Source of the DNA: Haliotis rufescens
Taxonomy: Eukaryota
Direction: 5' to 3'
NCBI RefSeq assembly: GCF_023055435.1
Contig: NW_025964001.1
Coordinates: forward strand, 11,780,001-11,844,000
DNA length: 64,000 nt
How positions within the stretch are numbered: position 1 is the stretch's first letter; each line of letters opens with the position of its first letter. Of this stretch, positions 6,217 through 62,300 are shown one piece after another. The position numbers and the translations under genes were made by a program. The notes below the pieces were generated by a model, which did no database searches, was not told where the DNA came from, and worked only from the letters and a program-made list of their open reading frames with translations.

Positions 6217-9200
6217 CATAGGTGCCAATGGCTTTGTGGAAGGAGAAGATGACATCAGATTTGCCCCTTTGTTTCAGCTCAATCTGTTGCCGGTCAGACC
6301 GACTCTGGACGATGGGTACCTCGTGCAGCAAGATAAGCCTGGCAGGATGCAACAATGTGGACATTACCCGTGCAGTCAAGCATGATAGCCTTGAGTCATA
6401 TAGTACATGTATTCACATCAAGGAACATGTCACATTCAAGACAGCAGTGTTGATTTTGTGTACACCTACACATGACCTCAGACATCAAGGTCATAAATGT
6501 CCAGGTTTTTTTTCAAATAACAAGTAATTTACAGAATATGTCATGGGTTTGTCCATTCTGGTATAGAATCATTGGCACAGTGAATTGTGAACATTCATAC
6601 AATTTACTACAACTGGGCAACTTTGGTACATTCTACAATGCTTGTCCACAAGCCACACAGAAGCCACAGCTATGGTGAGTGGCACTGATTATCCAAACAA
6701 TCTGTGCCCAGTTTGGCCATCAAGCTACTTACTGGAGTATGTTGGACATGATGGAGTTGACATCAAACATGGTCTCCAGCTCCAGTGTGAGCAGACTGTT
6801 GCCATCTCTGAAATATCACAACATGGAACATCAACACACATCATTCAAGTTTGGGACAATGCTCATCTGGCTCTCATTCCACAAGGTAATTGTAGCCTCA
6901 CAGTTGAATCACGCTTATCTGGACCTGTTAGTGAGTGTTCTGGAGTGAGTGAGTGAGTGAGTGTTTGGTTTTACGCCGCTTTTAGCAATATTCCAGCTAT
7001 ATCACGCCGGGGGACACCAGAAATGGGCTTCACACGTTGTACCCATGTCAGGAATTGAACCCAGGTCATGGGCATGACGAGCGAACGCTTTAACCACTAG
7101 GCTACCTGACCGCCCCGGATCATACAATGATTTCTGCAGGCTTCTTCGGAACTAGTCAGCCCCACCCCAACCGCCCCACATGTCAAATGAAATAAATACT
7201 ACACAAAAGGCTTTTTTTTTATCTGGAAAGTGAATTTCAGTTGCCAACAGTGCAAAATACACACCTTTGTAGAATTTGATAGGAGAGCTAACTCTGGTCA
7301 AGTTAACACAGGATTCAGATATCAGGAAACTTGTTTATCCGGACAATATTTGAGAAAACGCAAGTGATTGGATAAGCAGGGTCCTACTGTATGACCTAGT
7401 GAGCAGGGTTCAAAATTAAGCATGAAAGTCAGGGGATCCTTGTCATTACCCTAATGTTAAAGGATTTAGGGGTCTAGATTCAAATACCATAGGACAAGAC
7501 CTCAAGGGCCCCAAAACCACACCTCGTTTCAAACACTGGTAGGTTTTGGTTAACGAATCATAGTCATAACAAGTGGAGAGCTAAGATCACTTTGTAGAAT
7601 ACATTATTAATCAACTGTCCTAAATACACCAGTACCATACAGTGGAGCTAGAGGGTTTGAGTTTGAGCACAGGTTTTAGTGAGTAGGGGCAAATGTTGCT
7701 TTGAACAGTATTTCAGTCGTATCATGGCGTGTCATGATCGACACAGTTTATCGAGTTGGAAGAAAACAAACGAGCAAATCTGGGAATCATTGGTTTCTGT
7801 CATGCCAAAGGGCTGAGGCTCTGTACAACGACTTGCAGCGCCTTAGGCAGCTCGGCCATCCATGCTACCAATATGCTATGCCAATATGGTGTGTTCAGCA
7901 CTGTCCCAGACTACAGCCTGCCAAAGGCCAATATGATGAACGGACGGCCGGCCGGCCGGCCGGAAAGCCGGACAGTTTATTTATGTCTCATAAATGGGCA
8001 TACAAACAATATGAAAGAATACAGACAAAAGCAAAACATGCTCAAGCCACTCCTACAGGAGGGACAATCAGATATGGATACACATAAAATAAGACACAGA
8101 TAATATATCAAAATTGTATTCGCACATAACCAACATAGAAAATAGACTAAGATTGTAAGAAGATGAAACACGAAGTGTATAATAAATGAAGTGCCAACAC
8201 ACAGAATTCTCTGTTGACAATTGAGTTTACTGTGGACTTCACGACATCCCTAGACAGCTGCTCCATAATCTAACACGGACCACACCATCCAGTCATAAAG
8301 TTTTGTGTATGTCCTGTATTTCATTCTTCCCAGTGACTTGAACTTGGATATCAGAAGGCCTAGTGCTCGTCCAGCAGACTTGGTAGCTGCTTTAGCCATG
8401 AAGCTATAGTCTAGATGTTCTGTAAGGAGGCCGGGGTACGTCACCTCCAAGTCAATACCATAAAGCTCAAAGTGGAAATCTGTTTGCTGTATTGAAGGGT
8501 TTCTAAAGAATACGACTTTAGATTTTTCAGGGTTGATGCTTACCATACCAGCTATTTAAAACATCAAGCATGAGACTTGTCTCTGCAAGTAGTGCTATAT
8601 CATCTGTATACGCAAGGATACATACAATGTCATAATCAAGTTTTACACCAACACCAAATTCTTTCAGTGGAATGGTGAGGTCATTCATAAACATGTTGAA
8701 GAGTAAAGGGGAAAGAAGACATCCTTCATATTTCTCTTATTTCACTGGGACCCAGTCATTAAGTTTATGAGTAAACATGGTAAACTTGTGTTCAATGTCA
8801 ATAATAAGCTGATCGAATTATTTCTGTAGCTGAACGGTTGCCAAAAGAATGAGCTTCGTGTACGAATTTTCACACTTTGCTTAAAGATCTTCTTTGATAG
8901 GCATTTAGAAGTTGGAGTACTAAGTAAGGATAAGAATTTATGGAGGAACAACGTCTTTATTACAATTAAGAGCGACTGAAGCACTTCACTTCACTTGCTT
9001 GATAACGGTGTTAGAACCTACACCAAAACGTCACTCTTAATTGTAATAAAGAAGTTTACCATCCATAAATTCTTATCCTTACTTTGCTTGAAGAGTTTCA
9101 AAGTCAATTACTTGTTCACTTCTTACCTTTTTAACAGAATTGTCTGAAATATTGCCCTGATCAGTTAATGATCCCTTCCTAGAATGGGAATGCAGTGATG

Positions 9201-38049: not shown

Positions 38050-39548
38050 CTAATAGCTGGAGCCAATTTGAGGGAAATGAACTGAAGGATAGTCGAAGGG
38101 GGAATAACTCTGGTAAGGGTAGGTTCCGGTTGCCAAGGACTGCCAGGACGGACCAGTAGGTTGTGCTGCCCATTGATAGGCCTCCTGGTATGACACCTCG
38201 GGGGTCGGGTAGTGCTGAAGGGGGGTCCGTGTGGGTTCTGTACCAGGCGTGTCGTTGAAAGCTCCATCGTGAATAGTGTAAGGGGATGGATACGTAGATG
38301 ACGTCGTAAGGCTGCAGGTGTAGTCTGACGTAGGTGGGTAGCTGGGTTCGGCGCTTGGCAGGTAGTGGAGGCTGGAAAGAAGAACGGTTGGTAAACATTG
38401 GTTTGATTGTGTCCGTAGATACATTTCTGACAATCATATTAGAGTAGGTAAACCCATTATTCAAGCTGTATCACAGCCTTAGTCTGTCTTACAGACCCTG
38501 ATACATTTATATCAACTACAGCCCATGCTAGTCTATAATGTTTGACAAGTCTAGATTACTGCAGTATCAGTATCTGAAAATGAAGAGAATCACTGGGCTC
38601 CCTTTTTATTAGATTTTTGAACAGATAACTGAACAACTGTTTTTTTCTGTACAATATGTTCATTTCAGAGACTATATGTTAGTCTATCACAGCCTGTATA
38701 TTTGCATCATTTGACAGCATGTGCAAAATTCGGTATACAACAAAATCGTCCAGGCTAAATGCACCAAATCCTTATTTTTAGTCGTCTCCTGAGCTTGGGT
38801 GCCAAAGAATTTATATTATTTGGAATGAAGAGCTTGAGACTCACTTTGACCTGGCCTTGTCAGCAGCGTCGGTACACGTGGAAGGAGCGCGCGGAGTGAG
38901 CACATGACACCGTTCCTTCTGGGAACTGTCACGTGACTGGATTGTACCGCCATGATACAACTGTTTCCTCATCCAGGCCACGTGGCCATCCTTAGACTGC
39001 CGTTTAAACTTGGAGCGACGGTTCTGGAACCAGATCTGTGGAAAATAATAAACATCATATATACACATAGTGGCACACGTATTGTTTCTAGAAATACAAA
39101 ATATGGTAACTGACATGATTGTTATAATTAAATAATACTATAAATAAATATAATTAAATTATCAAAATTATGAAAATTATATATCAGCTCATACATTATG
39201 AAGAATCAGCTTACCGATAGTCTCTCTACGTCAATGTTGATGGTGTTGGAGAGATCCTCCAAGATGGAGCTGTCAGGATACTGAGAGGACAGGAACACCT
39301 TCTCCAGTTGCCTCAACTGTGAAGGAAAATATCGTTGTAATTAAATTAAATTCTTGACATTGCTGTAAACCATACTCATAATTTGCAATCACGCATAAGT
39401 AATAGTAGGAATTCTGATGGGGATTTTTTGTGCAGCCTATTTGTGTACTCACCTGAACGGCAGAGTACTTGATTCTGTTCCTGACCGGAAGTACCCTTTT
39501 GCTGACGTCACTCTTGCCGGGCTTGATCTCTGGACTCTTCACCTTCAT
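38050..39548 (-). CDS. Divergent PRD-type (Q50) homeobox gene, older single paralog, 4 coding exons, ~236 aa
   Basis: Exons 39548-39453, 39316-39215, 39035-38845 and 38371-38050 (GT-AG, 711 nt). Homeodomain RNRIKYSAVQ|LRQLEKVFLSSQYPDSSILEDLSNTINIDVERLS|IWFQNRRSKFKR has an intron between HD positions 46 and 47, typical of PRD class. The C-terminus is Y/P/S/T-rich and ends HFPQIGSSY. Confidence 0.9.
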
Positions 39549-40247: not shown

Positions 40248-40373
40248 TTGTATGTTTGGATAGTTGGCGTGAGGAACTGTTTAAATCTATAGACGCTGCA
40301 GACAACTTGAACTGTGTTAACGAAATAAGATATCGGAAATGAAGCTGTAATTTCGGAACGTGGGAGTTTTATA
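40248..40373 (-). promoter_or_regulatory. Putative core promoter and non-coding first exon of the older homeobox paralog
   Basis: TATAAAA starts at 40373 (minus strand) and an Inr-like TCATTT has its A at 40340. A donor CAA|GTAAGT lies near 40247, and an acceptor TTCAG sits immediately before the ATG at 39548. Confidence 0.55.
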
Positions 40374-40629
40374 CGTATTTCTGGCTGTCGGAACTCTTCT
40401 AACACCTATCGAAAAACAACACATTGAGATCATGTTGTTGTAAGAATCAGATCTCTTTCACAAGAGCAGGTACGACTCGCCGAGGAGAGCTTCTTGCGAA
40501 ACCATTATTGTTTTTACAGCAATGAGAATGTTAATTGTTTTCTCAATCAATACAGCAGCATCCTACTCCCCTTGTGCACGGGTAGGCGCACATCCAAGAC
40601 TTGGCTACCGTCTCCAGCGTCCATCCTCA

Positions 40630-40686
40630 TTTACCTGTCAAAACGTTACACATACATCAAAGAGGCCGCCAAACTTAGCGCACCTG
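40630..40686. promoter_or_regulatory. Conserved upstream block with TCF/LEF site + GCCGCC helper (older paralog)
   Basis: ttacctgtcaaaac.ttacac.tACATCAAAGa.GCCGCC...CACCTG is conserved with 46627-46682 although the flanking DNA has diverged. Confidence 0.55.
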
Positions 40687-42469
40687 AGCGTGTAATTGTT
40701 TCTTTAACAAACACATAATCAGCAGGTTGGACAGCGGGAGAAGCCAACATAACATAGTGATAGGATTAAAAATGTACATACCCGTCATGCCAAAAAAACA
40801 CTGAAAGAGACAGTGTGTGTATTTGTCTCTGTTTGAAACAAATATGGTAGTCACACTATTTCTCTTTTTGCTTTCAGACCCTTAGCAACAGATGTTGCCC
40901 CTATAAAGTAGAGATAGCTTTATGGATAACAGCTTCTTTATTTACTGTAAAGGAAGTTGTTATCGATAAAATTATCTCTACTTTTTCATCCGTCAACTTC
41001 CAAGTAATGCCTATAGGTTTGTTCGCTCGACTGATAATATATAAATAACGAAACATTTTTGTGCTTCAATCCAGTTATTATCTCCCAAATGCACGACACT
41101 GGTACTAATTAAGAACCACAGCGTTTCCACGAGTAAGGCAATCAAACATGGATACATATAAGAAAATGTGTAGCCAGAAGATGGCAAATATTAGGTATAG
41201 TTCTTACTGTTATTGTTGATTGCAGCTTTGTTATTAAAAAATATCAGTCTTTCAAACTAAGTTTTGTTTTATACAGCATCAACTTTTTTTTTTGTTATGC
41301 GCCGAGGTAAGGGCGTCCTTATTATTTATTTACTTATATATTTTCGAAAGAAAAAAATACTATTTAAATCCTGAATTATCCGCCGTCCGTCTCTATTTGT
41401 ATGACGCTTCTTGAAAAATAATGTAAGTAGCAAATTTCACAATGGTTTGAAAACCACGGTCGTATATATTCTCAACAGCATATGTTCTGAAAGTGAACTG
41501 TTGAAACTTGGAATGAAAGCAACTCTTCGTGACTTATATAATGCGATATTGTGACAAACACGCTGTCGGAACGCGAGCGGGCCGCCAGCAATAAGCCACT
41601 GGTTCTCTGTCGACTTTAGCCACCAACGTACGGAAGTTGTGTTATCTGGATAGGATTCGCCTCCACCATCGTTCATATATAAAGCGGGGAGCTATACTGA
41701 TGTTTGAGAAAGTAACATGAAAACCTGCGCAAATTTGTCATTTCAATCCTCATAAATATATACGCAACCGGTAGGGTAGCCAAAACGTACCGGGTAATTA
41801 CCACTATTAAAAATAAACACCAATGCGTGCTTCGACCTACTGTGGTATTTCAAGAAGATTTAAGACATTCTGATTCAGAATGGGATCAGAATCCTCAAGT
41901 TTAATCAATGCATAGATTTATTTTTTTCACATTGCGTTTAAATTTCATTTTTCGGGTTTAGGTTGCTCTCAGTATGTTTTAATTGTCAAATATTTGGTAT
42001 AGCTCGTCAAAGCTTTGAAAAGGTATTCTACAAATAAGGATATTTCTTTTCCTTTTTTTCTTTTTTCGACCACCGTCGTATACATTACTCGCAATCATAA
42101 AAAAAATATATATTGTGACAACAAAGTTTTGATCTTATGCAATATGGGTTTATGCCCAAATGGTTTTGGGTAAATCGGTAAATGTATGATGTTTTACTGT
42201 GCCAGACTGTCCTGCAGTGTCTGAAGTTTGCATGTTGTCCCTGGAGAGAGCTTGTACAAGGGACGTAACTCCGTTTGTAATTACCAATTAGCTGGTTCCA
42301 CAATTCCTCTCCACGGTGCGTTTAAATTTCGGTTTTCGGGTTCATCAACACGACATATGTTTGATATGTTTTATGTTCATTCTTCTAATATAGGTCGTCA
42401 AAGCCTAGATATTCTTTAATAGGGAATCTTCTTTAAACCAGCTTTTTATTTTCCGTCTGTCACCGTCAG

Positions 42470-43191
42470 AGCTTCCGTTAGTTGGTCTTTGTTTGATGGA
42501 CGGCTGGTATCTTTTGATGTGAATGGCTTCCGTTAGTTGGTCTTTGTTTGATGGACGGCTGGTATCTTTTGATGTGAATGGCTTCCGTTAGTTGGTCTTT
42601 GTTTGATGGACGGCTGGTATCTTTTGATGTGAATAGCTTCCGTTAGTTGGTCTTTGTTTGATGGACGGCTGGTATCTTTTGATGTGAATGGCTTCCGTTA
42701 GTTGGTCTTTGTTTGGTGGACGGCTGGTATCTTTTGATGTGAATGACTTCCGTTAGTTGGTCTTTGTTTGATGGACGGCTGGTCTCTTTTGATGTGAATG
42801 ACTTCCGTTAGTTGGTCTTTGTTTGATGGACGGCTGGTCTCTTTTGATGTGAATGACTTCCGTTAGTTGGTCTTTGTTTGATGGACGGCTGGTGTCTTTT
42901 GGTGTGAATAGCTTCCGTTAGTTGCTCTCTTTTAATGGACGGCTAATATCTTTTGATGTGAATAGCTTCCGTTAGTTGGTCTTTGTTTGATGAACGCCTG
43001 GTATCTTTTGATGTGAATAACTTCCGTTAGTTGGTCTTTGTGTGATGGACGGCTGATATCTCTTGATGAGGATAGCTTCCGTTAGTTGGTCTTTGTGTGA
43101 TGGACGGCTGGTATCTTTTGATGTGAATGGCTTCCGTAAGTTGGTCTTTGTTTGATGGACGGCTGTTATTTTTTTATGCGAATGGCTTCCG
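42470..43191. repeat. 55-bp minisatellite, ~13 copies
   Basis: Tandem unit gcttccgttagttggtctttgtttgatggacggctggtatcttttgatgtgaatg; the right-hand copies are more diverged. Confidence 0.95.
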
Positions 43192-44997
43192 TTTGTTTCA
43201 GGATCATGTTGACTTAGAATTTAGAGGCAAAGACACCGTATCTGGTGGCTTGATGTTGTTGTATGTGATCTGGACGGAGGAACTGGAGTCTTGTTGGACG
43301 GGTGATGTGGTGTTCAGCAACAACATCAACATATTATTTCACTCAAAAACGCAAAGCAGCGATACGTATTGTTTCTCCATAGATCGTTGGCTTTATGTCC
43401 TCTTTTCTAAGCCTCGAAATAAATCCAGTGATTTTTGGGATTTGTTTATAGTTGTTAGGGATTCAGCTCCGTTGAGATGCGATAGTTGGAATTGTAAATC
43501 AGTTGGTAAACACAAAGCGTATACTAATGTAGAAAAGTGTCATGATCATATTTGTTTGGTATAATTTTTGGAAAAAGACAAAACGACCTTGATTACAGAA
43601 CTAATGCCGAGACAGTTGCAAGATGTAAGTGAAGAGCATGGGTGGGACAGGTTCACCATGTCTGACAACGTTTTCACAAATAAAGTTTCCTTATCTTTGG
43701 TCACTGGGCGACAAACGTGGTACATGTTATGGAAGGACTTAAACAGTTGACCATCGACATTACTATCGCCACGAATCCAGACTCCCTTTAGTGTTGAAAA
43801 GTCTGATCAGTATCGAACACTTTTGAGAAGTCGAAAACATGGAAGTGATTATTGAGAAGTGATAGCACTTAATTTACGATATCCAGCATGGTCTTCATTG
43901 ACCGTAACTGAGTAGCTTCAAAGTGTTATTTGATGCCAAATGTATCATTCAAGCCTTGAAAACATAGCTACATTCATTGTTTTAGTTCTTACCTATATAC
44001 GATGGAACATATGTAACCACAATACTCTAAAATATGTGAGCTGAGCAAAGCAGGATATCTGTCGCAGTTGCAACACACATGTTTCGAAGAAGGTGAGGAT
44101 CTATATCTGTGAGGGTAGCTATGCTAAAAAATGATTTATACAATGATTTATATTTCATATCACACAACCTAAAGAATGATATAGCAAGTGTTACTTCATT
44201 TGGACCAAGAAAGATACCCATCAATTCATGCTTAACAACCCCTACATCATTTCATGCACATTTCATTGAGATTTCACATGTGACGTATGTTGTGACTTGG
44301 TTTGAGGATGTTACCTTCACAAGTGGTATTTTTGACAATTGACAATAAATGAATGACTGAGAATTGGATTTCTATATCTCAGCAAAGCAGGATATCTTTC
44401 GCAGTTGCAACACACGTTTCCATGGAGGTTAGCCCAGAAATGGGCTTCACACAATGTGGGCAATCGAACCCGGGTCTTCAGTGTGATGTGCGAACGTTTT
44501 AACCACGAGGCTACTCCATCGCCCCTATATCTGTGAGGCTAGCTTAGCTGACAATCCTTTATATTTCATATCACACAACCTAAAGAACGGTTAAACGTCA
44601 CAATAAAAGTTTCCTTCAAGCAGATTCATTTGAACTGTGAAGAGGTTTGTCTCTTAGTCCAACCAACATCCACCAATCATGTGTTCCAATCCAAGATTCG
44701 CCTGTTTAGGATCCTTTGTTTATCAGTAAGATATTTGTAATCGTGGTTTACATGAAAGTGGGAAAATGCGTGCTGCATAAGAACATGAAATGATAGTTTT
44801 CAGATAATGTTTATTATCTCAGAAACATTTACACAGTCGTCTTCAAATGACAGTTGCAATCCATAATGTAAACACAACAATATATACAATAATAGTAACA
44901 AAGCAGGCCCAAGATGAGTTCAACATTGGACTGCAGTGCATATTGCACAAATTACGCCCTCGTTCTTCATCTGACCACTAATACATTCCCGAAACTT

Positions 44998-46233
44998 CTA
45001 GACGCCTATCTGGGGAAAAGTCATCTGATCGCTTAGGAAGTTGAAGTGGGGTAGATAATTCTGGTAGTATGGAGTTTCGGGAGATCTGAAGTTGGACTGG
45101 TTGGAATACTCTGTCCACTGTTGCGGGCATGGTGTGACTTGGAAGGATGTTTCCGTCATCAGATGTGGGTAGTGGAGAGTATTCTGGGTAGGCCAAGTAC
45201 AGGATACTGCGTCACCGAGTGCGCTGTAGACGTTGTGTGATGATGGGTACATCAGGGGGTTGTAGACGGGGTCGTAGTCCGTCACTGAGGAGCAGCCGGG
45301 TCCAGTGCTGGGTAGGTAGTGGAGGCTGAAGAAGAGAATAGATTGTTGTTAGTCCGAGACAGACATGCTATTGTGTTGAAGCTAATAAGAGCCAAAATGC
45401 GCGCCTGTGTAACTAACTTGGTGTGTACTTACTTTGATTTGGGTTTGTCTTTCACGTCATCTTTCTTGGAAGTCGTTGGTGGTGTGAGCACGTGACACTC
45501 GTCCGTAGCCGTTACGTCACGTGACCGTGACGTTCCTTGTTGATACAGTTGCTGTCTCATCCAGTTCACGCGAGCACCTTTAGACTGACGCTTGAACTTG
45601 GAACGGCGGTTCTGGAACCAGATCTGTATGGCAGAAAGAGGTCATTATTATCGAGACATTTCATGAAATCAGGGTCTTTTATATGGGTTGAAAAGATTAT
45701 GAAATGAAATATACAACAATTCTTTAAGTCCAAACTATGTACCATATAAACTGAATAAAGCAGTAAAAGTTAGAATTTCCCTTCAGTACATTTCATGGGT
45801 CCTATGTACATTTAAAAGGACAAGAAAGAGGGTTTTATATCACTATGATATTGTGTATTGTGTGATCAATTATCTCTTTCGAGAACTTCTGTTAGGTGTA
45901 ATAAAGAGGATTTACTTACCGATAGTCTCTCTACGTCGATGTTGATGGTGTTGGAGAGATCCTCCAAGATGGAGCTGTCAGGATACTGAGAGGACACGAA
46001 TACCTTCTCCAGTTGCCTCAACTGTGGATATGGATAGCGGAGATGAAAACGTGTTAACTTTGTATTTCGATTTACTTTTGAAATAACAATAGTTTATGTT
46101 TTCTTCCTATTCACGTTTCGAGCAATTAAATGTTTACCTGACTAGCAGAGTACTTGATTCTGTTCCTTGCCGGAACGATTGTCTTGTTGACGGTACACTT
46201 GCTTGGCTTGGTTTCGGGGCTCTTCACTTTCAT
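44998..46233 (-). CDS. PRD-type homeobox gene, array copy 1 (238 aa)
   Basis: Exons 46233-46138, 46021-45920, 45623-45433 and 45325-44998 (717 nt, intact). Product: MKVKSPETKPSKCTVNKTIVPARNRIKYSASQ|LRQLEKVFVSSQYPDSSILEDLSNTINIDVERLS|IWFQNRRSKFKRQSKGARVNWMRQQLY...FPQIGV. Confidence 0.9.
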
Positions 46234-46337
46234 TATAGTGGGGTAATTGTATAGAATACTTTTAAAAGAGAAAATGCTCGAAATGTGAAGATAATCTCGG
46301 TGACAAGTCTTGCTGGTTTCGATTAGGGCAGCTCTAT

Positions 46338-46374
46338 GACTGATGACTCAAGGATGGAAGTTTTCGACTTTATA
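46338..46374 (-). promoter_or_regulatory. Putative core promoter of array copy 1 (repeated in each unit)
   Basis: TATAAAG starts at 46374 and Inr TCAGTC has its A at 46341. This is the same 33-nt spacing as in the older paralog. A TGACTCA (AP-1-like) site is at 46344-46350. Confidence 0.55.
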
Positions 46375-46626
46375 CCCGTACCATGACCATCGGGCTTCTT
46401 TTAAGTCAACCACCATACACCACCCACTCATTACTCCCACGTCTGTGTTGTTAATAATCAGGAATTCTTTCTTCATGTATAGCCGCCATGCTGTTTAAGT
46501 TGAAACATCTTGATTGTTTTCACAGCAATAAGAACTATATCTTTGTTTACCTAATTAAAACGGTAGCAGTCGTCGACGAGGTAGCGGTACATTAAAGTAG
46601 CCTCCACCAGGTGAGCGTGTACTCAC

Positions 46627-46682
46627 TTACCTGTCAAAACTTTACACCTACATCAAAGACGCCGCCTTACGTAGCACACCTG
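46627..46682. promoter_or_regulatory. Conserved upstream block with TCF/LEF site + GCCGCC helper (array; also at ~51012, ~55375, ~59726)
   Basis: CATCAAAG at 46651-46658, a 2-nt spacer, then GCCGCC at 46661-46666. Confidence 0.55.
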
Positions 46683-47509
46683 TGTGGACACTACGTTTAA
46701 ATGTCCATCTTGTTTTGTGGGACAATTTCATAAACAAACAGGGACAAAACGTTTACAAATCCTAGCGAGGAATCCTTATAGTGTATGGAAGGGCCAGGCA
46801 TTAACAATAACCGCCGTCACATAGCTGGAATATTGCTGAGTGCGGCGTTAAACAAAAAAAACCAAAAACATTAACCATACCGTAGTCTTCACAAGGATAA
46901 CTTATTTGTTATTGTGTGAAACAGTTATGCTCGTAATAAGCTTGAAACGCATATCCATTATATAATTGAACACCTTTGGAATAAGAGGATACAGAAAAAT
47001 CTCGATGATCATGTATTTGTTCAAAAGAAATAAGGCGTTTATATGTCGTGAGCCAAGAAAAATGGTTCCCAACTGTCTACATTTCACAACTTTTGAGGTA
47101 CACTCGAGCAAGCTCTTTCCACGATGATTTCAAAGAGTGTTCTTAGTTACGACATAAAGCTTTTAAAACGTTTTGTGGTAGACATGTGGATGACATTTCC
47201 AAATTTGACTCATCAGTGACCAAATGATGCTTGATACAGTTCCCTTTTTTAACTTGTTCCCTTGGTTTTTTTTCGGGTGAACAATTGACTTGGTTTTGCA
47301 TGTGTTTGTGACGGGGTGCAACCGGGAAAATAGCGGAGGCGGATACGCTCGCCTTTTCGCCAACATCTGGTATCATCACTACTTGATGTCGATTAATGGA
47401 AACAAACTCATGATATGGTCGGAATTATACAATCGAGTGTGTGTTTGACACAAATTCTTAATATGAATATGGAAAGTTTATTTTATTGTCTTTATCCGCC
47501 TCTCTTAAG

Positions 47510-50594: not shown

Positions 50595-53500
50595 TATAGT
50601 GGGGTAATTGTATAGAATACTTTTAAAAGAGAAAATGCTCGAACTGTGAAGATGATCTCGGTGACAAGTCTTGCTGGTTTCGATTAGGGCAGCTCTATGA
50701 CTGATGACTCAAGGATGGAAGTTTTCGACTTTATACCCGTACCATGACCATCGGGCTTCTTTTAAGTCAACCACCATACACCACCCACTCATTACTCCCA
50801 CGTCTGTGTTGTTAATAATCAGGAATTCTTTCTTCATGTATAGCCGCCATGCTGTTTAAGTTGAAACATCTTGATTGTTTTCACAGCAATAAGAACTATA
50901 TCTTTGTTTACCTAATTAAAACGGTAGCAGTCGTCGACGAGGTAGCGGTACATTAAAGTAGCCTCCACCAGGTGAGCGTGTACTCACTTACCTGTCAAAA
51001 CTTTACACCTACATCAAAGACGCCGCCTTACGTAGCACACCTGTGTGGACACTACGTTTAAATGTCCATCTTGTTTTGTGGGACAATTTCATAAACAAAC
51101 AGGGACAAAACGTTTACAAATCCTAGCGAGGAATCCTTATAGTGTATGGAAGGGCCAGGCATTAACAATAACCGCCGTCATATAGCTGGAATATTGCTGA
51201 GTGCGGCGTTAAACAAAAAACCCCAAAAACATTAACAATACCGTAGTCTTCACAAGGATAACTTATTTGTTATTGTGTGAAACAGTTATGCTCGTAATAA
51301 GCTTGAAACGCATTTCCATTATAAAATTGAACACCTTTGGAATAAGAGGATACAGAAAAATCTCGATGATCATGTATTTGTTCAAAAGAAATAAGGCGTT
51401 TATATGTCGTGAGCCAAGAAAAATGGTTCCCAACTGTCTACATTTCACAACTTTTGAGGTACACTCGAGCAAGCTCTTTCCACGGTGATTTCAAAGAGTG
51501 TTCTTAGTTACAACATAAAGCTTTTAAAACGTTTTGTGGTAGACATGTGGATGACATTTCCAAATTTGACTCATCAGTGACCAAATGATGCTTGATACAG
51601 TTCCCTTTTTTAACTTGTTCCCTTGTTTTTTTTTCGGGTGAACAATTGACTTGGTTTTGCATGTGTTTGTGACGGGGTGCAACCGGGAAAATAGCGGAGG
51701 CGGATACGCTCGCCTTTTCGCCAACAGCTGGTATTATCACTACTTGATGGCGATTAATGGAAACAAACTCATGATATGGTCGGAATTATACAATCGAGTG
51801 TTTGTTTGACACAAATTCTTAATATGAATATGGAAAGTTTATTTCATTGTCTTTATCCGCCTCTCTTAAGTGAGTGAGTGAGTGAGTATGGTTTTACGCC
51901 GCTTTTAGCAATATTCCAGCAATATCACGGCGGGGGACACCAGAAATGGGCTTCACACATTGTACCCATGTCGGGAATCGAACCCGGGTCTTCGGCGTGA
52001 CGAGCGAACGCTTTAACCACTAGGCTACCCGACCGCCCGCCTCTCTTAAGAATTTTAGGTTTGGTAAAATCCTTGCAATTTTCAAGTTACGTGTCCATCA
52101 TAACCACCAATAACACGTAAAATTACTTTTCTCTTTGTAGCTATTTATATTTCACTTTATTAACTTCTAAATATTTTACTCTATGCTAACTGAGCGATTT
52201 CAAGATCACGCTCAGATTCTATATATTCCGACGTTAGGGATATTATCATTTGATCGAAATATTAGAAGAAGTTGGCTGACACTAAAGTGTAGAGATGTTT
52301 TTGGAGTTAACATTTAGTGAAGACTCACAACCCACATGAAACTGAAAAGTCAGCAACTATATTTACAATTTATAGAGGGATAAGGTGCAAGTATTTCATG
52401 GGACGTTTGATGTTCCTCACCTGTATATTTAGCGCCTCACAATATGATAATGAAATACACATTACGTACCTAAACTGACACATAAATAAATTGATATATA
52501 ACATTTGGAAGATGCATATGGTATTTTGACAGAAAATCGGATCCTAAATGATGGTTATGAAGAATTTAATGTCAGTATTGATTTGGCAAACTTTTCTAAA
52601 GCTGTTGAAACTATTGCCATGTACTTTTTCGTGGTAATAATCCAAATATCTGTAAATGACACCTTATACTGTGATTGCTGTACCATTACTTGCTTGGCTT
52701 TTCTGCAATACAAGGGTCACCCTGTAGGTAAATTTCCCGTTTATCAGTCTGTATCTCTCACCATATGAAATAATGAATGGTTTGAACTAGTGGTATATAA
52801 TGTATGTACAGTACTGATTGACGTAATTGGTTTGTCCGACACGCCTTATATATATGTTTTACGCTCCCAGACGGTAACTTGTTATTAAGCCAATGGTATC
52901 CAAAGGAAGCGCCCGATAATCCGATAACGTCAGCATGAAGGTTTGGCTCATATACGCAACATGGCGATTACAAGTGCATTCGAAAGTTGTTGATAATACC
53001 TTACAGGCATAGATCGGGTTATCACATTGACCGTAACTGAGCAGCTTCAAAGTTTAACATGAGTGTTATTTGATGCCAAATGTATCATTCAAGCCTTGAA
53101 AACATAGCTTCATTTAATGTTTTAGTTATTACCTATATACGATGGAACATATGTAACCACAACACTCTTAAATATGTGACCTGAGCAAAGCAGGATATCT
53201 GTCGCAGTTGCAACACACATGTTTCGAAGAAGGTGAGGATCTATATCTGTGAGGGTGGCTTTGCTAAAAAAATGATTTATACAATGCTTTATATTTCATA
53301 TCACACAACCTAAAGAAGGTTAAATTTCACAATAAAAGTTTCCTTCAAGCAGATTCATTTGAACTGTGAAGAGGTTTGTCTCTAAGTCCAACCAACATCC
53401 ACCAATCATGTGTTCGAATCCAAGATTCGCCTGTTTAGGATCCTTTGTTAGTAAGATATTTGTAATCGTGGTTTACATGAAAGTGGGAAAATGCGTGCTG

Positions 53501-54957: not shown

Positions 54958-57900
54958 TATAGTGTGGTAATTGTATAGAATACTTTTAAAAGAGAAAATG
55001 CTCGAAATGTGAAGATGATCTCGGTGACGAGTCTTGCTGGTTTCGATTAGGGCAGCTCTATGACTGATGACTCAAGGATGGAAGTTTTCGACTTTATACC
55101 CGTACCATGACCATCGGGCTTCTTTTAAGTCAACCACCATACACCACCCACTCATTGCTCCCACGTCTGTGTTGTTAATAATCAGGAATTCTTTCTTCAT
55201 GTATAGCCGCCATGCTGTTTAAGTTGAAACATCTTGATTGTTTTCACAGCAATAAGAACTATATCTTTGTTTATCTAATTAAAACGGTAGCAGTCGTCGA
55301 CGAGGTAGCGGTACATTAAAGTAGCCTCCACCAGGTGAGCGTGTACTCACTTACCTGTCAAAACTTTACACCTACATCAAAGACGCCGCCTTACGTAGCA
55401 CACCTGTGTGGACACTACGTTTAAATGTCCATCTTGTTTTGTGGGACAATTTCATAAACAAACAGGGACAAAACGTTTACAAATCCTAGCGAGGAATCCT
55501 TATAGTGTATGGAAGGGCCAGGCATTAACAATAACCGCCGTCATATAGCTGGAATATTGCTGAGTGCGGCGTTAAACAAAAACACCCAAAAACATTAACA
55601 ATACCGTAGTCTTCACAAGGATAACTTATTTGTTATTGTGTGAAACAGTTATGCTCGTAATAAGCTTGAAACGCATTTCCATTATATAATTGAACACCTT
55701 TGGAATAAGAGGATACAGAAAAATCTCGATGATCATGTATTTGTTCAAAAGAAATAAGGCGTTTATATGTCGTGAGCCAAGAAAAATGGTTCCCAACTGT
55801 CTACATTTCACAACTTTTGAGGTACACTCGAGCAAGCTCTTTCCACGGTGATTTCAAAGAGTGTTCTTAGTTACGACATAAAGCTTTTAAAACGTTTTGT
55901 GGTAGACATGTGGATGACATTTCCAAATTTGACTCATCAGTGACCAAATGATGCTTGATACAGTTCCCTTTTTTAACTTGTTCCCTTGGTTTTTTTTCGG
56001 GTGAACAATTGACTTGGTTTTGCATGTGTTTGTGACGGGGTGCAACCGGGAAAATAGCGGAGGCGGATACGCTCGCCTTTTCGCCAACAGCTGGTATTAT
56101 CACTACTTGATGGCGATTAATGGAAACAAACTCATGATATGGTCGGAATTATACAATCGAGTGTTTGTTTGACACAAATTCTTAATATGAATATGGAAAG
56201 TTTATTTCATTGTCTTTATCCGCCTCTCTTAAGTGAGTGAGTGAGTGAGTATGGTTTTACGCCGCTTTTAGCAATATTCCAGCAATATCACGGCGGGGGA
56301 CACCAGAAATGGGCTTCACACATTGTACCCATGTCGGGAATCGAACCCGGGTCTTCGGCGTGACGAGCGAACGCTTTAACCACTAGGCTACCCGACCGCC
56401 CGCCTCTCTTAAGAATTTTAGGTTTGGTAAAAACCTTGCAATTTTCAAGTTACGTGTCCATCATAACCACCAATAACACGTAAAATTACTTTTCTCTTTG
56501 TAGCTATTTATATTTCACTTTATTAACTTCTAAATATTTTACTCTATGGTAACTGAGCGATTTCAAGATCACGCTCAGATTCTATATATTCCGACGTTAG
56601 GGATATTATCATTTGATCGAAATATTAGAAGAAGTTGGCTGACACTAAAGTGTAGAGATGTTTTTGGACTTAACATTTAGTGAAGACTCACAACCCACAT
56701 GAAACTGAAAAGTCAGCAACTATATTTACAATTTATAGAGGGATAAGGTGCATGTATTTCATGGGACGTTTGATGTTCCTCACCTGTATATTTAGCGCCT
56801 CACAATATGTTAATGAAATACACATTACGTACCTGAACTGACACATAAATAAATTGATATATAACATTTGGAAGATGCATATGGTATTTTGACAGAAAAT
56901 CGGATCCTAAATGATGGTTATGAAGAATCTAATGTCAGTATTGATTTGGCAAACTTTTCTAAAGCTGTTGAAACTATTGCCATGCACTTTTTCGTGGTAA
57001 TAATCCAAATATCTGTAAATGACACCTTATACTGTGATTGCTGTACCATTACTTGCTTGGCTTTTCTGCAATACAAGGGTCACCCTGTAGGTAAATTTCC
57101 CGTTTATCAGTCTGTATCTCTCACCATATGAAATAATAAATGGTTTGAACTAGTGGTATATAATGTATGTACAGTACTGATTGACGTAATTGGTTTGTCC
57201 GACACGCCTTATATATATGTTTTACGCTCCCAGACGGTAACTTGTTATTAAGCCAATGGTATCCAAAGGAAGCGCCCGATAATCCGATAACGTCAGCATG
57301 AAGGTTTGGCTCATATACGCAACATGGCGATTACAAGTGCATTCGAAAGTTGTTGATAATACCTTACAGGCATAGATCGGGTTATCACATTGACCGTAAC
57401 TGAGCAGCTTCAAAGTTTAACATGAGTGTTATTTGATGCCAAATGTATCATTCAAGCCTTGAAAACATAGCTTCATTTAATGTTTTAGTTATTACCTATA
57501 TACGATGGAACATATGTAACCACAACACTCTTAAATATGTGACCTGAGCAAAGCAGGATATCTATCGCAGTTGCAACACACATGTTTCGAAGAAGGTGAG
57601 GATCTATATCTGTGAGGGTGGCTTTGCTAAAAATGATTTATACAATGCTTTATATTTCATATCACACAACCTAAAGACGGTTAAATTTCACAATAAAAGT
57701 TTCCTTCAAGCAGATTCATTTGAACTGTGAAGAGGTTTGTCTCTTAGTCCAACCAACATCCACCAATCATGTGTTCGAATCCAAGATTCGCCTGTTTAGG
57801 ATCCTTTGTTAGTAAGATATTTGTAATCGTGGTTTACATGAAAGTGGGAAAATGCGTGCTGCATAAGAACATGAAATGATAGTTTTCAGATAATGTTTAT

Positions 57901-59317: not shown

Positions 59318-62300
59318 TATAGTGTGGTAATTGTATAGAATACTTTTAAAAGAGAAAATGCTCGAAATGTGAAGATGATCTCGGTGACGAGTCTTGCTGG
59401 TTTCGATTAGGGCAGCTCTATGACTGATGACTCAAGGATGGAAGTTTTCGACTTTATACCCGTACCATGACCATCGGGCTTCTTTTAAGTCAACCACCAT
59501 ACTCATTACTCCCACGTCTGTGTTGTTAATAATCAGGAATTCTTTCTTCATGTATAGCCGCCATGCTGTTTAAGTTGAAACATCTTGATTGTTTTCACAG
59601 CAATAAGAACTATATCTTTGTTTATCTAATTAAAACGGTAGCAGTCGTCGACGAGGTAGCGGTACATTAAAGTAGCCTCCACCAGGTGAGCGTGTACTCA
59701 CTTACCTGTCAAAACTTTACACCTACATCAAAGACGCCGCCTTACGTAGCACACCTGTGTGGACACTACGTTTAAATGTCCATCTTGTTTTGTGGGACAA
59801 TTTCATAAACAAACAGGGACAAAACGTTTACAAATCCTAGCGAGGAATCCTTATAGTGTATGGAAGGGCCAGGCATTAACAATAACCGCCGTCATATAGC
59901 TGGAATATTGCTGAGTGCGGCGTTAAACAAAAACACCCAAAAACATTAACAATACCGTAGTCTTCACAAGGATAACTTATTTGTTATTGTGTGAAACAGT
60001 TATGCTCGTAATAAGCTTGAAACGCATTTCCATTATATAATTGAACACCTTTGGAATAAGAGGATACAGAAAAATCTCGATGATCATGTATTTGTTCAAA
60101 AGAAATAAGGCGTTTATATGTCGTGAGCCAAGAAAAATGGTTCCCAACTGTCTACATTTCACAACTTTTGAGGTACACTCGAGCAAGCTCTTTCCACGGT
60201 GATTTCAAAGAGTGTTCTTAGTTACGACATAAAGCTTTTAAAACGTTTTGTGGTAGACATGTGGATGACATTTCCAAATTTGACTCATCAGTGACCAAAT
60301 GATGCTTGATACAGTTCCCTTTTTTAACTTGTTCCCTTGGTTTTTTTTCGGGTGAACAATTGACTTGGTTTTGCATGTGTTTGTGACGGGGTGCAACCGG
60401 GAAAATAGCGGAGGCGGATACGCTCGCCTTTTCGCCAACAGCTGGTATTATCACTACTTGATGGCGATTAATGGAAACAAACTCATGATATGGTCGGAAT
60501 TATACAATCGAGTGTTTGTTTGACACAAATTCTTAATATGAATATGGAAAGTTTATTTCATTGTCTTTATCCGCCTCTCTTAAGTGAGTGAGTGAGTGAG
60601 TATGGTTTTACGCCGCTTTTAGCAATATTCCAGCAATATCACGGCGGGGGACACCAGAAATGGGCTTCACACATTGTACCCATGTCGGGAATCGAACCCG
60701 GGTCTTCGGCGTGACGAGCGAACGCTTTAACCACTAGGCTACCCGACCGCCCGCCTCTCTTAAGAATTTTAGGTTTGGTAAAATCCTTGCAATTTTCAAG
60801 TTACGTGTCCATCATAACCACCAATAACACGTAAAATTACTTTTCTCTTTGTAGCTATTTATATTTCACTTTATTAACTTCTAAATATTTTACTCTATGC
60901 TAACTGAGCGATTTCAAGATCACGCTCAGATTCTATATATTCCGACGTTAGGGATATTATCATTTGATCGAAATATTAGAAGAAGTTGGCTGACACTAAA
61001 GTGTAGAGATGTTTTTGGACTTAACATTTAGTGAAGACTCACAACCCACATGAAACTGAAAAGTCAGCAACTATGTTTACAATTTATAGAGGGATAAGGT
61101 GCAAGTATTTCATGGGACGTTTGATGTTCCTCACCTGTATATTTAGCGCCTCACAATATGATAATGAAATACACATTACGTACCTGAACTGACACATAAA
61201 TAAATTGATATATAACATTTGGAAGATGCATATGGTATTTTGACAGAAAATCGGATCCTAAATGATGGTTATGAAGAATTTAATGTCAGTATTGATTTGG
61301 CAAACTTTTCTAAAGCTGTTGAAACTATTGCCATGTACTTTTTCGTGGTAATAATCCAAATATCTGTAAATGACACCTTATACTGTGATTGCTGTACCAT
61401 TACTTGCTTGGCTTTTCTGCAATACAAGGGTCACCCTGTAGGTAAATTTCCCGTTTATCAGTCTGTATCTCTCACCATATGAAATAATGAATGGTTTGAA
61501 CTAGTGGTATATAATGTATGTACAGTACTGATTGACGTAATTGGTTTGTCCGACACGCCTTATATGTATGTTTTACGCTCCCAGACGGTAACTTGTTATT
61601 AAGCCAATGGTATCCAAAGGAAGCGCCCGATAATCCGATAACGTCAGCATGAAGGTTTGGCTCATATACGCAACATGGCGATTACAAGTGCATTCGAAAG
61701 TTGTTGATAATACCTTACAGGCATAGATCGGGTTATCACATTGACCGTAACTGAGCAGCTTCAAAGTTTAACATGAGTGTTATTTGATGCCAAATGTATC
61801 ATTCAAGCCTTGAAAACATAGCTTCATTTAATGTTTTAGTTATTACCTATATACGATGGAACATATGTAACCACAACACTCTTAAATATGTGACCTGAGC
61901 AAAGCAGGATATCTGTCGCAGTTGCAACACACATGTTTCGAAGAAGGTGAGGATCTATATCTGTGAGGGTGGCTTTGCTAAAAAAATGATTTATACAATG
62001 CTTTATATTTCATATCACACAACCTAAAGACGGTTAAATTTCACAATAAAAGTTTCCTTCAAGCAGATTCATTTGAACTGTGAAGAGGTTTGTCTCTTAG
62101 TCCAACCAACATCCACCAATCATGTGTTCGAATCCAAGATTCGCCTGTTTAGGATCCTTTGTTAGTAAGATATTTGTAATCGTGGTTTACATGAAAGTGG
62201 GAAAATGCGTGCTGCATAAGAACATGAAATGATAGTTTTCAGATAATGTTTATTATCTCAGAAACATTTACACAGTCCTCTTCAAATGACAGTTGCAATC

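What the first reader, a model, noticed from the sequence alone, without database searches (positions are those of the whole stretch)
40630..46682. Conserved bipartite TCF/LEF + helper element suggests the cluster is a direct Wnt/beta-catenin target
Seen: the old paralog and the array copies have unalignable introns. Yet both keep ACATCAAAG + 2 nt + GCCGCC (40654-40670; 46650-46666; repeated at ~51012, 55375, 59726) about 310-315 bp upstream of the inferred start site, with a CTGTCA (TALE-type) site and a CACCTG E-box in the same order. Known: CTTTGAT is the TCF HMG-box site and GCCGCC(R) is the helper site bound by the C-clamp of invertebrate TCF/Pangolin. Xenopus siamois/twin and zebrafish dharma/bozozok are lineage-specific PRD-like genes directly induced by beta-catenin. 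Inference: a convergent siamois-like module, multiplied by the array.
Basis: partly seen in the sequence, partly recalled or inferred. Interest (0 to 1): 0.8.

Follow-up and report, generated by a model that had tools for sequence, protein, structure and literature searches.

The report
Conserved promoter block with TCF-like site
A 60-base non-coding block upstream of abalone-specific homeobox genes is real and conserved, and it does look like a Wnt (TCF) binding site, but it also ends in a perfect splice-donor signal that is kept more widely, so Wnt control is a fair hypothesis and not a demonstrated fact.

Summary
ACATCAAAG-NN-GCCGCC occurs 5 times in the window (0 expected) and upstream of all 12 array copies plus the old paralog. 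The genes lie on the minus strand. The motif sits in a 66-bp core that is 88% identical between old paralog and array, while its flanks are 35-50% identical and coding exon 1 is 77%. By published fly rules it is a valid bipartite TCF site: HMG 10/11, Helper 6-7/7, "AK1" spacing. Such pairs are rare by chance (about 39 in 1.33 Gb outside one transposon family).

The Wnt reading is not established, for four reasons:
- A third paralog on another contig shares the promoter scaffold, including the TATA box about 280-290 bp downstream. There the TCF core is one base off, GGCGGC is absent and TGACAG is broken.
- All three paralogs do keep GATGT (an upstream ATG with an early stop) and a consensus 5' splice donor, CAG|GTARGT.
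- Each promoter has only one TCF site.
- Exon 2 shows gene conversion between the paralogs (97% against 30-43% in flanking intron).

My best guess (0.4) is an upstream leader exon and promoter block. The scan had already noted this array on the same DNA.

The parts
46621..46686 (-). Array copy 1: conserved core block (sense: CACACAGGTG..GGCGGCGTCTTTGATGTAGGTGTAAAGTTTTGACAG|GTAAGTGAGT)
   Evidence: 58/66 identical to old paralog 40625-40690; identity peak 0.83-0.90 in alignment A1
46650..46666 (-). TCF HMG-like site (CTTTGAT 46652-46658) plus Helper-like GGCGGC (46661-46666), AK1 arrangement
   Evidence: grammar from PMC4154663
46677..46682 (-). E-box CAGGTG
46625..46636 (-). TGACAG (46631-46636) overlapping a perfect 5' splice-donor consensus CAG|GTAAGT (boundary 46631|46630)
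   Evidence: aligned donor-like site present in all three paralogs
46648..46653 (-). Upstream ATG-TAG (start-stop) inside the 'HMG site'
   Evidence: equivalents in the old paralog (40646-40657) and in C594
46731..46740 (-). TGTTTGTTTA (forkhead-like), kept in all three paralogs, about 45 bp 5' of the block
   Evidence: alignment A2
46512..46533 (-). Second conserved island TTCTTATTGCTGTGAAAACAAT
   Evidence: identity 0.73-0.77 in A1
46369..46374 (-). TATAAA box, invariant in all three paralogs
46247..46277 (-). Pyrimidine tract plus AG (TTTTCTCTTTTAAAAG|, ends about 46262), acceptor-like, 29 nt 5' of the ATG at 46233. There is no good donor between the TATA box and this point.
   Evidence: read directly
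45001..46233 (-). Array gene CDS: exon 1 46138-46233, exon 2 45920-46021, exon 3 45435-45623, exon 4 45001-45327
   Evidence: splice model matched by H. rubra protein P0001; exon 2 hits Pfam Homeodomain
40625..40690 (-). Old paralog: conserved core block (E-box 40681-40686, GGCGGC 40665-40670, CTTTGAT 40656-40662, TGACAG 40635-40640, CAG|GTAAAT boundary 40635|40634)
40368..40373 (-). Old paralog TATAAA, followed by a leader donor CAA|GTAAGT (40248|40247) and an acceptor at about 39550 just 5' of the ATG at 39548
51011..51027 (-). Motif, array copy 2
55374..55390 (-). Motif, array copy 3
59725..59741 (-). Motif, array copy 4

Best explanation
The 17-nt motif is the centre of a 60-66-bp non-coding block. 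The block is the 5'-most conserved island of a promoter scaffold of about 450 bp: forkhead-like TGTTTGTTTA, then the block, then an AACAAT-containing island, then a TATA box about 280-290 bp downstream. Three abalone-specific PRD-like homeobox lineages share this scaffold: the old paralog, the 12-copy 4.36-kb array, and a third gene on contig C594. I think the block is most likely the start region and short non-coding leader exon of an upstream, alternative transcription start. That exon would carry a tiny upstream ORF and end at a consensus 5' splice donor (CAG|GTARGT). The donor would splice to the acceptor just 5' of the start codon, and the conserved TATA box would drive a second, proximal start. 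On this view the TCF-HMG plus Helper pair inside the block is a feature of the old+array lineage only, and it may or may not bind TCF. Shown here: the conservation pattern, the donor consensus in 3 of 3 paralogs, the acceptor-like tracts, and the absence of the TCF/Helper pair in the third paralog. Inferred: that the block is transcribed and that the donor is used.
For: The donor-like site lines up in all three paralogs: GACAG|GTAAAT, GACAG|GTAAGT and GACCAG|GTAGGT. In C594 the same alignments show CTTTGAT as CTTCGAT or TTTTGAT, GGCGGC missing and TGACAG broken by an inserted C. Conservation between old paralog and array stops about 9 nt past the donor, as at a true exon edge. All three genes have a pyrimidine tract plus AG just 5' of the ATG. 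In the array no other usable donor lies between the TATA box and that acceptor. GATGT (an upstream ATG) is the only part of the 'HMG site' that is invariant in all three, and each has an in-frame stop before the donor. The block (88%) is better kept than coding exon 1 (77% overall, 69% at third positions), as is usual for sequence close to a start site.
Against: A TATAAA box conserved in all three paralogs lies about 280-290 bp downstream of the block and argues for the main start there. The old and C594 genes have their own donor downstream of that TATA box, so their acceptors need no upstream exon. No clear core promoter lies upstream of the block. Non-coding leader exons are seldom this well conserved, and mismatches that fall only between motif-like words are what a transcription-factor cluster would show. 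CAGGTA could also be an E-box-type (Snail/ZEB) half-site.
Confidence: 0.4

Rival explanations
1. The block is an untranscribed Wnt-response element about 310 bp upstream of the TATA-driven start. TCF binds CTTTGAT through its HMG box and GGCGGC through its C-clamp, and beta-catenin switches on the old paralog and all 12 array copies, as with siamois or dharma.
For: HMG site TCTTTGATGTA is 10/11 to SCTTTGWWSWW. Helper GCCGCCA is 7/7 in the old paralog and GCCGCCT 6/7 in the array. [quoted passage not shown] None of the 8 old-versus-array mismatches in the core falls in CAGGTG, GGCGGC, TCTTTGATGTA or TGACAG, and the spacer base between Helper and HMG varies. GGCGGCN{1,7}CTTTGAT has a reversed-pattern control count of only 39 in 1.33 Gb. 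Invertebrate TCFs carry a C-clamp (abstracts of PMC3896468 and PMC4267635).
Against: The pair is not kept in the third paralog, and no CTTTGAT or ATCAAAG occurs in about 9 kb upstream of it. There is a single TCF heptamer per promoter and no cluster. The motif words were picked after seeing which letters are conserved, so the 'footprint' argument is partly circular. The gene conversion seen in exon 2 could keep the block similar without selection. A C-clamp TCF in this genome was not verified. No expression or perturbation data exist.
Confidence: 0.25
2. The block is a promoter-proximal enhancer bound by other factors: E-box/Snail-ZEB type sites (CAGGTG and CAGGTA), a TALE site (TGACAG), and neighbouring forkhead- and Sox-like words. 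It has no Wnt input, and the TCF/Helper and donor resemblances are coincidental.
For: Islands of identity are separated by variable spacers. Its position about 280-290 bp upstream of a conserved TATA box is kept in three paralogs. TGTTTGTTTA and an AACAAT island are also conserved.
Against: Two independent rare matches, a full 9/9 donor consensus and an HMG+Helper pair, would both have to be chance. TGACAG and CAGGTG are not kept in C594.
Confidence: 0.2
3. The block has no function of its own. It is similar in the two neighbouring paralog lineages because short gene-conversion tracts pass between the old paralog and the array 6 kb away.
For: Exon 2 is 97% identical (third positions 94%) while the adjoining intron is 30-43% identical, so conversion does act at this locus.
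Against: The block is 88% identical, not 97%, so it was not part of the same recent event. The homologous region in the unlinked C594 paralog still aligns and keeps GATGT and the donor, which conversion between neighbours cannot explain.
Confidence: 0.1

Closest known systems
Bipartite TCF/Pangolin Wnt-response elements (HMG site + Helper site; Drosophila nkd, Notum; C. elegans POP-1 targets)
   Same: HMG-type CTTTGAT with flanks 10/11 to the fly consensus. GCCGCC(R) lies 1 bp away on the opposite strand (AK1), within the favoured AK0-6 class (PMC4154663).
   Different: A single pair instead of a cluster. No binding or response data. The pair is absent from the third paralog. It overlaps an upstream ATG and lies 14 nt from a consensus splice donor.
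Xenopus siamois/twin and zebrafish dharma/bozozok promoters (from general knowledge, not tested here)
   Same: Lineage-restricted PRD-like Q50 homeobox genes with a TCF-type site a few hundred bp upstream of a TATA-type promoter.
   Different: Those genes have several TCF sites and proven beta-catenin dependence. Here neither expression time, place nor Wnt response is known, and the genes form a 12-copy macrosatellite.
Alternative non-coding first exons with upstream ORFs in developmental genes
   Same: A short conserved stretch ending in CAG|GTAAGT, an acceptor just 5' of the start codon, and a tiny uORF.
   Different: Not shown to be transcribed. A conserved TATA box lies downstream of it rather than upstream.
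DUX4/D4Z4-type homeobox macrosatellites (context of the array, from general knowledge)
   Same: A PRD-like homeobox gene repeated in kb-sized, near-identical tandem units, each with its own promoter copy.
   Different: The units here hold an intron-containing gene, and an older single-copy paralog sits next to the array. This is not the subject of this finding.

Membership tests
TCF/Pangolin bipartite Wnt-response element | HMG-box site matching SCTTTGWWSWW (core CTTTGWW) | tested here: met
   TCTTTGATGTA in the old paralog and in all array copies: 10/11, only the first S is T (consensus)
TCF/Pangolin bipartite Wnt-response element | Helper site GCCGCCR close to the HMG site | tested here: met
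   GCCGCCA (old, 7/7); GCCGCCT or GCCGCCC (array, 6/7); 1 bp from the 11-bp HMG site
TCF/Pangolin bipartite Wnt-response element | Favourable orientation and spacing (AK0-6 or FF0-2) | tested here: met
   Helper lies 5' of CTTTGAT on the opposite strand with spacing 1, which is AK1. The naming of the orientation is my inference from the text, because the figure is not held.
TCF/Pangolin bipartite Wnt-response element | Sites kept in homologous promoters | tested here: inconclusive
   Kept between the old paralog and the array. Not kept in the C594 paralog: CTTCGAT or TTTTGAT, and no GGCGGC. Orthologues in other species could not be reached.
TCF/Pangolin bipartite Wnt-response element | Several TCF sites clustered in the module | tested here: not met
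   One CTTTGAT in 3.6 kb of the old gene plus upstream. In the array unit the only other one lies in the coding region at 45432.
TCF/Pangolin bipartite Wnt-response element | The organism's TCF carries a C-clamp | not tested
   PF08347 found nothing. The literature says invertebrate TCFs have one.
TCF/Pangolin bipartite Wnt-response element | TCF occupancy and response to Wnt/beta-catenin perturbation | not testable with these tools
   Needs experiments
Non-coding leader exon with 5' splice donor | Consensus donor MAG|GTRAGT at the 3' edge of the conserved stretch | tested here: met
   CAG|GTAAGT (array, 9/9), CAG|GTAAAT (old), CAG|GTAGGT (C594), aligned with each other
Non-coding leader exon with 5' splice donor | Downstream acceptor before the start codon | tested here: met
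   Pyrimidine tract plus AG 29 nt (array), 2 nt (old) and 12 nt (C594) 5' of the ATG
Non-coding leader exon with 5' splice donor | Transcripts that start at or before the block and use the junction | not testable with these tools
siamois/dharma-type beta-catenin-induced PRD-like genes | Lineage-restricted PRD-like homeodomain gene | tested here: met
   Exon 2 hits Pfam Homeodomain at E 1.6e-4, 21.8 bits, just under the 22.9 cut-off. WFQNRR with Q50 and the intron at homeodomain position 46/47 are visible. The C-terminal exon has a single related cluster among 1.84 billion representatives, from Haliotis rubra.
siamois/dharma-type beta-catenin-induced PRD-like genes | Early, beta-catenin-dependent expression | not testable with these tools
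   No expression data reached. Fourteen RNA-like runs hold 15-23% of the words of 44950-46750, but their tissue and stage are unknown.

The most novel reading that the evidence does not exclude
The AK1 HMG+Helper pair is a working TCF/C-clamp site. It would make a Haliotis-specific PRD-like homeobox gene and its 12-copy macrosatellite direct beta-catenin targets. That would be a molluscan, array-amplified convergence on the siamois/dharma organiser logic, acquired after the split from the C594 paralog.
Probability: 0.2. Interest if true: 0.65.

Novelty: new member of a known kind. Interest (0 to 1): 0.35.

Why it matters
If the TCF reading were right, it would link the Wnt/beta-catenin axis-forming signal of a spiralian embryo to a young, tandemly amplified homeobox gene. 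That would give a testable example of how new transcription factors are wired into old signalling pathways, and of what copy-number amplification adds. If the leader-exon reading is right, the block is ordinary gene anatomy: an alternative first exon with a small uORF. Its main value would then be for correct annotation of these genes. Either way, a few hundred bases of RNA-seq or 5' RACE data would decide the matter.

Tried and rejected
- **Structured or small RNA:** there is no Rfam match at either block. The RNA fold z-score is -2.5 for the array but -0.2 for the old paralog, and the structures differ. Rejected.
- **Spliced-leader or U1-like gene:** there is no Rfam hit and no similarity beyond the donor complement. 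Rejected.
- **Block derived from a transposon:** the only copy elsewhere in the genome is a 92-nt patch inside a SINE on C212 (L013), derived from the array and not the reverse. The high-copy GGCGGCTCCTTTGATAT family has unrelated flanks. Rejected.
- **L028 (C212:960696), which looked block-like:** no homeobox exon lies within 8.7 kb downstream. Its GGCGGCGCCTTTGATGT word matches the spelling seen in L017, L018 and L042, of which L018 and L042 resemble the high-copy repeat family. I take it as chance resemblance.
- **Selection signal among the 12 array copies:** there are only 4 variable sites in 46600-46700 against 5-7 per 100 bp nearby, so the test has no power.
- **RNA reads:** The database protein P0001, whose helix 3 is identical in amino acids, was used only by its id.
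- **Joined spliced protein model:** it was never built or searched. All searches were exon by exon.
- **TCF C-clamp check:** PF08347 gave nothing, and the HMG_box loci could not be fetched.
- **Literature:** searches found no abalone Wnt-perturbation data and no description of this gene.
Full report
**What is there**

The window comes from an abalone genome: G000, 1.33 Gb, contig C223. The nearest database protein is Haliotis rubra XP_046558121.1.

The homeobox genes lie on the minus strand. There is one older paralog (ATG at 39548). There is also a 4.36-kb tandem array that starts at about 43900 and runs beyond the window, with 12 copies in the genome.

The array gene has four coding exons: 46138-46233, 45920-46021, 45435-45623 and 45001-45327. 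The H. rubra protein matches this splice model exactly. Exon 2 hits Pfam Homeodomain. The C-terminal exon has relatives only in Haliotis among 1.84 billion cluster representatives.

**The observation**

ACATCAAAG-NN-GCCGCC occurs at the five stated places, and no match occurred in 100 shuffles. It also lies upstream of every array copy.

On the sense strand the block reads CAGGTG .. GGCGGC-NN-CTTTGATGT .. TTTTGACAG|GTAAGT.

A local alignment of the two upstream regions covers about 190 bp at 69% identity. A 66-bp core within it is 58/66 identical. Windowed identity is 0.83-0.90 in the core against 0.35-0.5 around it. A second, weaker island lies at 46512-46533, and TATAAA sits at 46369-46374 / 40368-40373.

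The core (88%) is better kept than coding exon 1, which is 77% identical overall and 69% at third positions. So the block is real and not a chance match.

**Does it fit a TCF site?**

Archbold et al. 2014 (PMC4154663) give these rules:
- HMG consensus SCTTTGWWSWW.
- Helper consensus GCCGCCR.
- Strongest enrichment for AK0-6 and FF0-2 pairs.

Here the HMG site is TCTTTGATGTA (10/11). The Helper is GCCGCCA in the old paralog and GCCGCCT or GCCGCCC in the array. It lies on the other strand, 1 bp 5' of the HMG site. I read that as AK1, but the orientation name is my inference, because the figure is not held.

Genome-wide, GGCGGCN{1,7}CTTTGAT gives 671 hits against 39 for the reversed control. Most of the excess is one transposon family (GGCGGCTCCTTTGATAT) with unrelated flanks.

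**What weakens the Wnt reading**

1. A third paralog exists on contig C594 (L079). It has exons 1-4, a TATA box, a leader donor and an acceptor.
   - Its upstream region aligns with the other two: TGTTTGTTTA, then the block, then TTAGGTAAACAA, then the TATA box. The block-to-TATA distance is about 280-290 bp in all three.
   - In the block, however, it has CTTCGAT or TTTTGAT (one base off, depending on the alignment), no GGCGGC, and TGACCAG in place of TGACAG.
   - No CTTTGAT or ATCAAAG occurs in about 9 kb upstream of it.
2. The three paralogs share two things in the block. One is GATGT, an upstream ATG followed by an in-frame stop: ATG-TAG, ATG-TAT-GTG-TAA and ATG-TGG-CCT-TCT-TGA. The other is a consensus 5' splice donor: CAG|GTAAGT, CAG|GTAAAT and CAG|GTAGGT. 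Identity between old paralog and array ends about 9 nt past that donor.
3. All three genes have a pyrimidine tract plus AG just 5' of the start codon. In the array no other usable donor lies between the TATA box and that acceptor.
4. Each promoter has a single TCF heptamer.
5. Gene conversion acts at this locus. Exon 2 is 97% identical with 2 of 34 third positions changed, next to intron at 30-43%. This agrees with an earlier scan note.

**What supports an untranscribed element**

The TATA box is invariant in all three paralogs. In addition, the old and C594 genes have their own donors below that TATA box, so an upstream exon is not required.

**What could not be done**

- Two metagenome scans found no abalone DNA.
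- The joined spliced protein was never built or searched.
- Fourteen RNA-like runs from four organism labels hold 15-23% of the words of 44950-46750. This is compatible with spliced mRNA, but it says nothing about the leader.

**Verdict**

The interpretation cannot be decided with these tools. My ranking is:
- an upstream leader exon and promoter block with a functional donor: 0.4;
- an enhancer bound by other factors: 0.2;
- conversion alone: 0.1.

The C594 paralog is a ready-made negative control for any Wnt test.

Noticed in passing
L013 = G000:C212:2441673-2441764: A 92-nt copy of the array block (equivalent to window 46685->46593, of the distal-copy type, with the GGCGG of the Helper missing) is patched into the middle of a tRNA-derived SINE. 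It lies antisense to the SINE, with CTTTAA microhomology at one edge. It looks like a templated repair insertion.
   Followed up: partly
genome-wide, e.g. L082-L085 (G000:C1:14483515, C1:16173548, C2:765864, C13:24705505): A high-copy repeat family carries GGCGGCTCCTTTGATAT, itself a near-perfect AK1-type HMG+Helper pair. The family accounts for most of the ~600 matches of the 17-nt motif at up to 1 mismatch, against about 30 for the reversed control. It could seed many TCF-like sites.
   Followed up: partly
window 46648-46653; 40646-40657; L079 about 7953-7967: All three paralogs keep an upstream ATG inside the 'HMG site', followed by an in-frame stop 1-4 codons later and before the donor-like site. 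If the block is transcribed, this is a mini-uORF.
   Followed up: partly
window 39215-39316 vs 45920-46021: Exon 2 is 97% identical between the old paralog and the array (94% at third positions), while the adjoining 60 nt of intron are 30-43% identical. This is exon-limited homogenisation, as an earlier scan note proposed.
   Followed up: yes
G000:C223:11869514-11869616 (outside the window): One array copy has exon 2 split over two reading frames (two partial hits, 1-19 and 18-34), so it is probably a frameshifted, broken copy.
   Followed up: no
window 46592-46700: The array block is bracketed by an imperfect inverted repeat, TTAAACGTAGTGTCCACACAGGTG / CACCTGGTGGAGGCTACTTTAA (fold z -2.5). 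The old paralog lacks it.
   Followed up: partly
window 42471-43197: A 55-bp tandem repeat of 13 copies (92% matches) lies between the old paralog and the start of the array.
   Followed up: no
window 40903-40987: A palindromic hairpin gives weak hits to a miRNA model (MIR781) on both strands, far below the gathering score. It is probably a small inverted-repeat element upstream of the old paralog.
   Followed up: no
L079 = G000:C594:37774000-37783999: A third, unlinked paralog of the array gene: exon 1 at 7022-7111, exon 2 at 6509-6610, and the two more downstream coding exons are also found. Exon 2 is 74% identical in amino acids (25/34) to the array gene. It has the same TATA / leader exon / intron layout as the old paralog.
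   Followed up: yes
L011 = G000:C223:11872810-11876010: The last array copy loses homology with the other units about 250 bp upstream of the block (equivalent to window ~46930), which marks the distal end of the array.
   Followed up: partly
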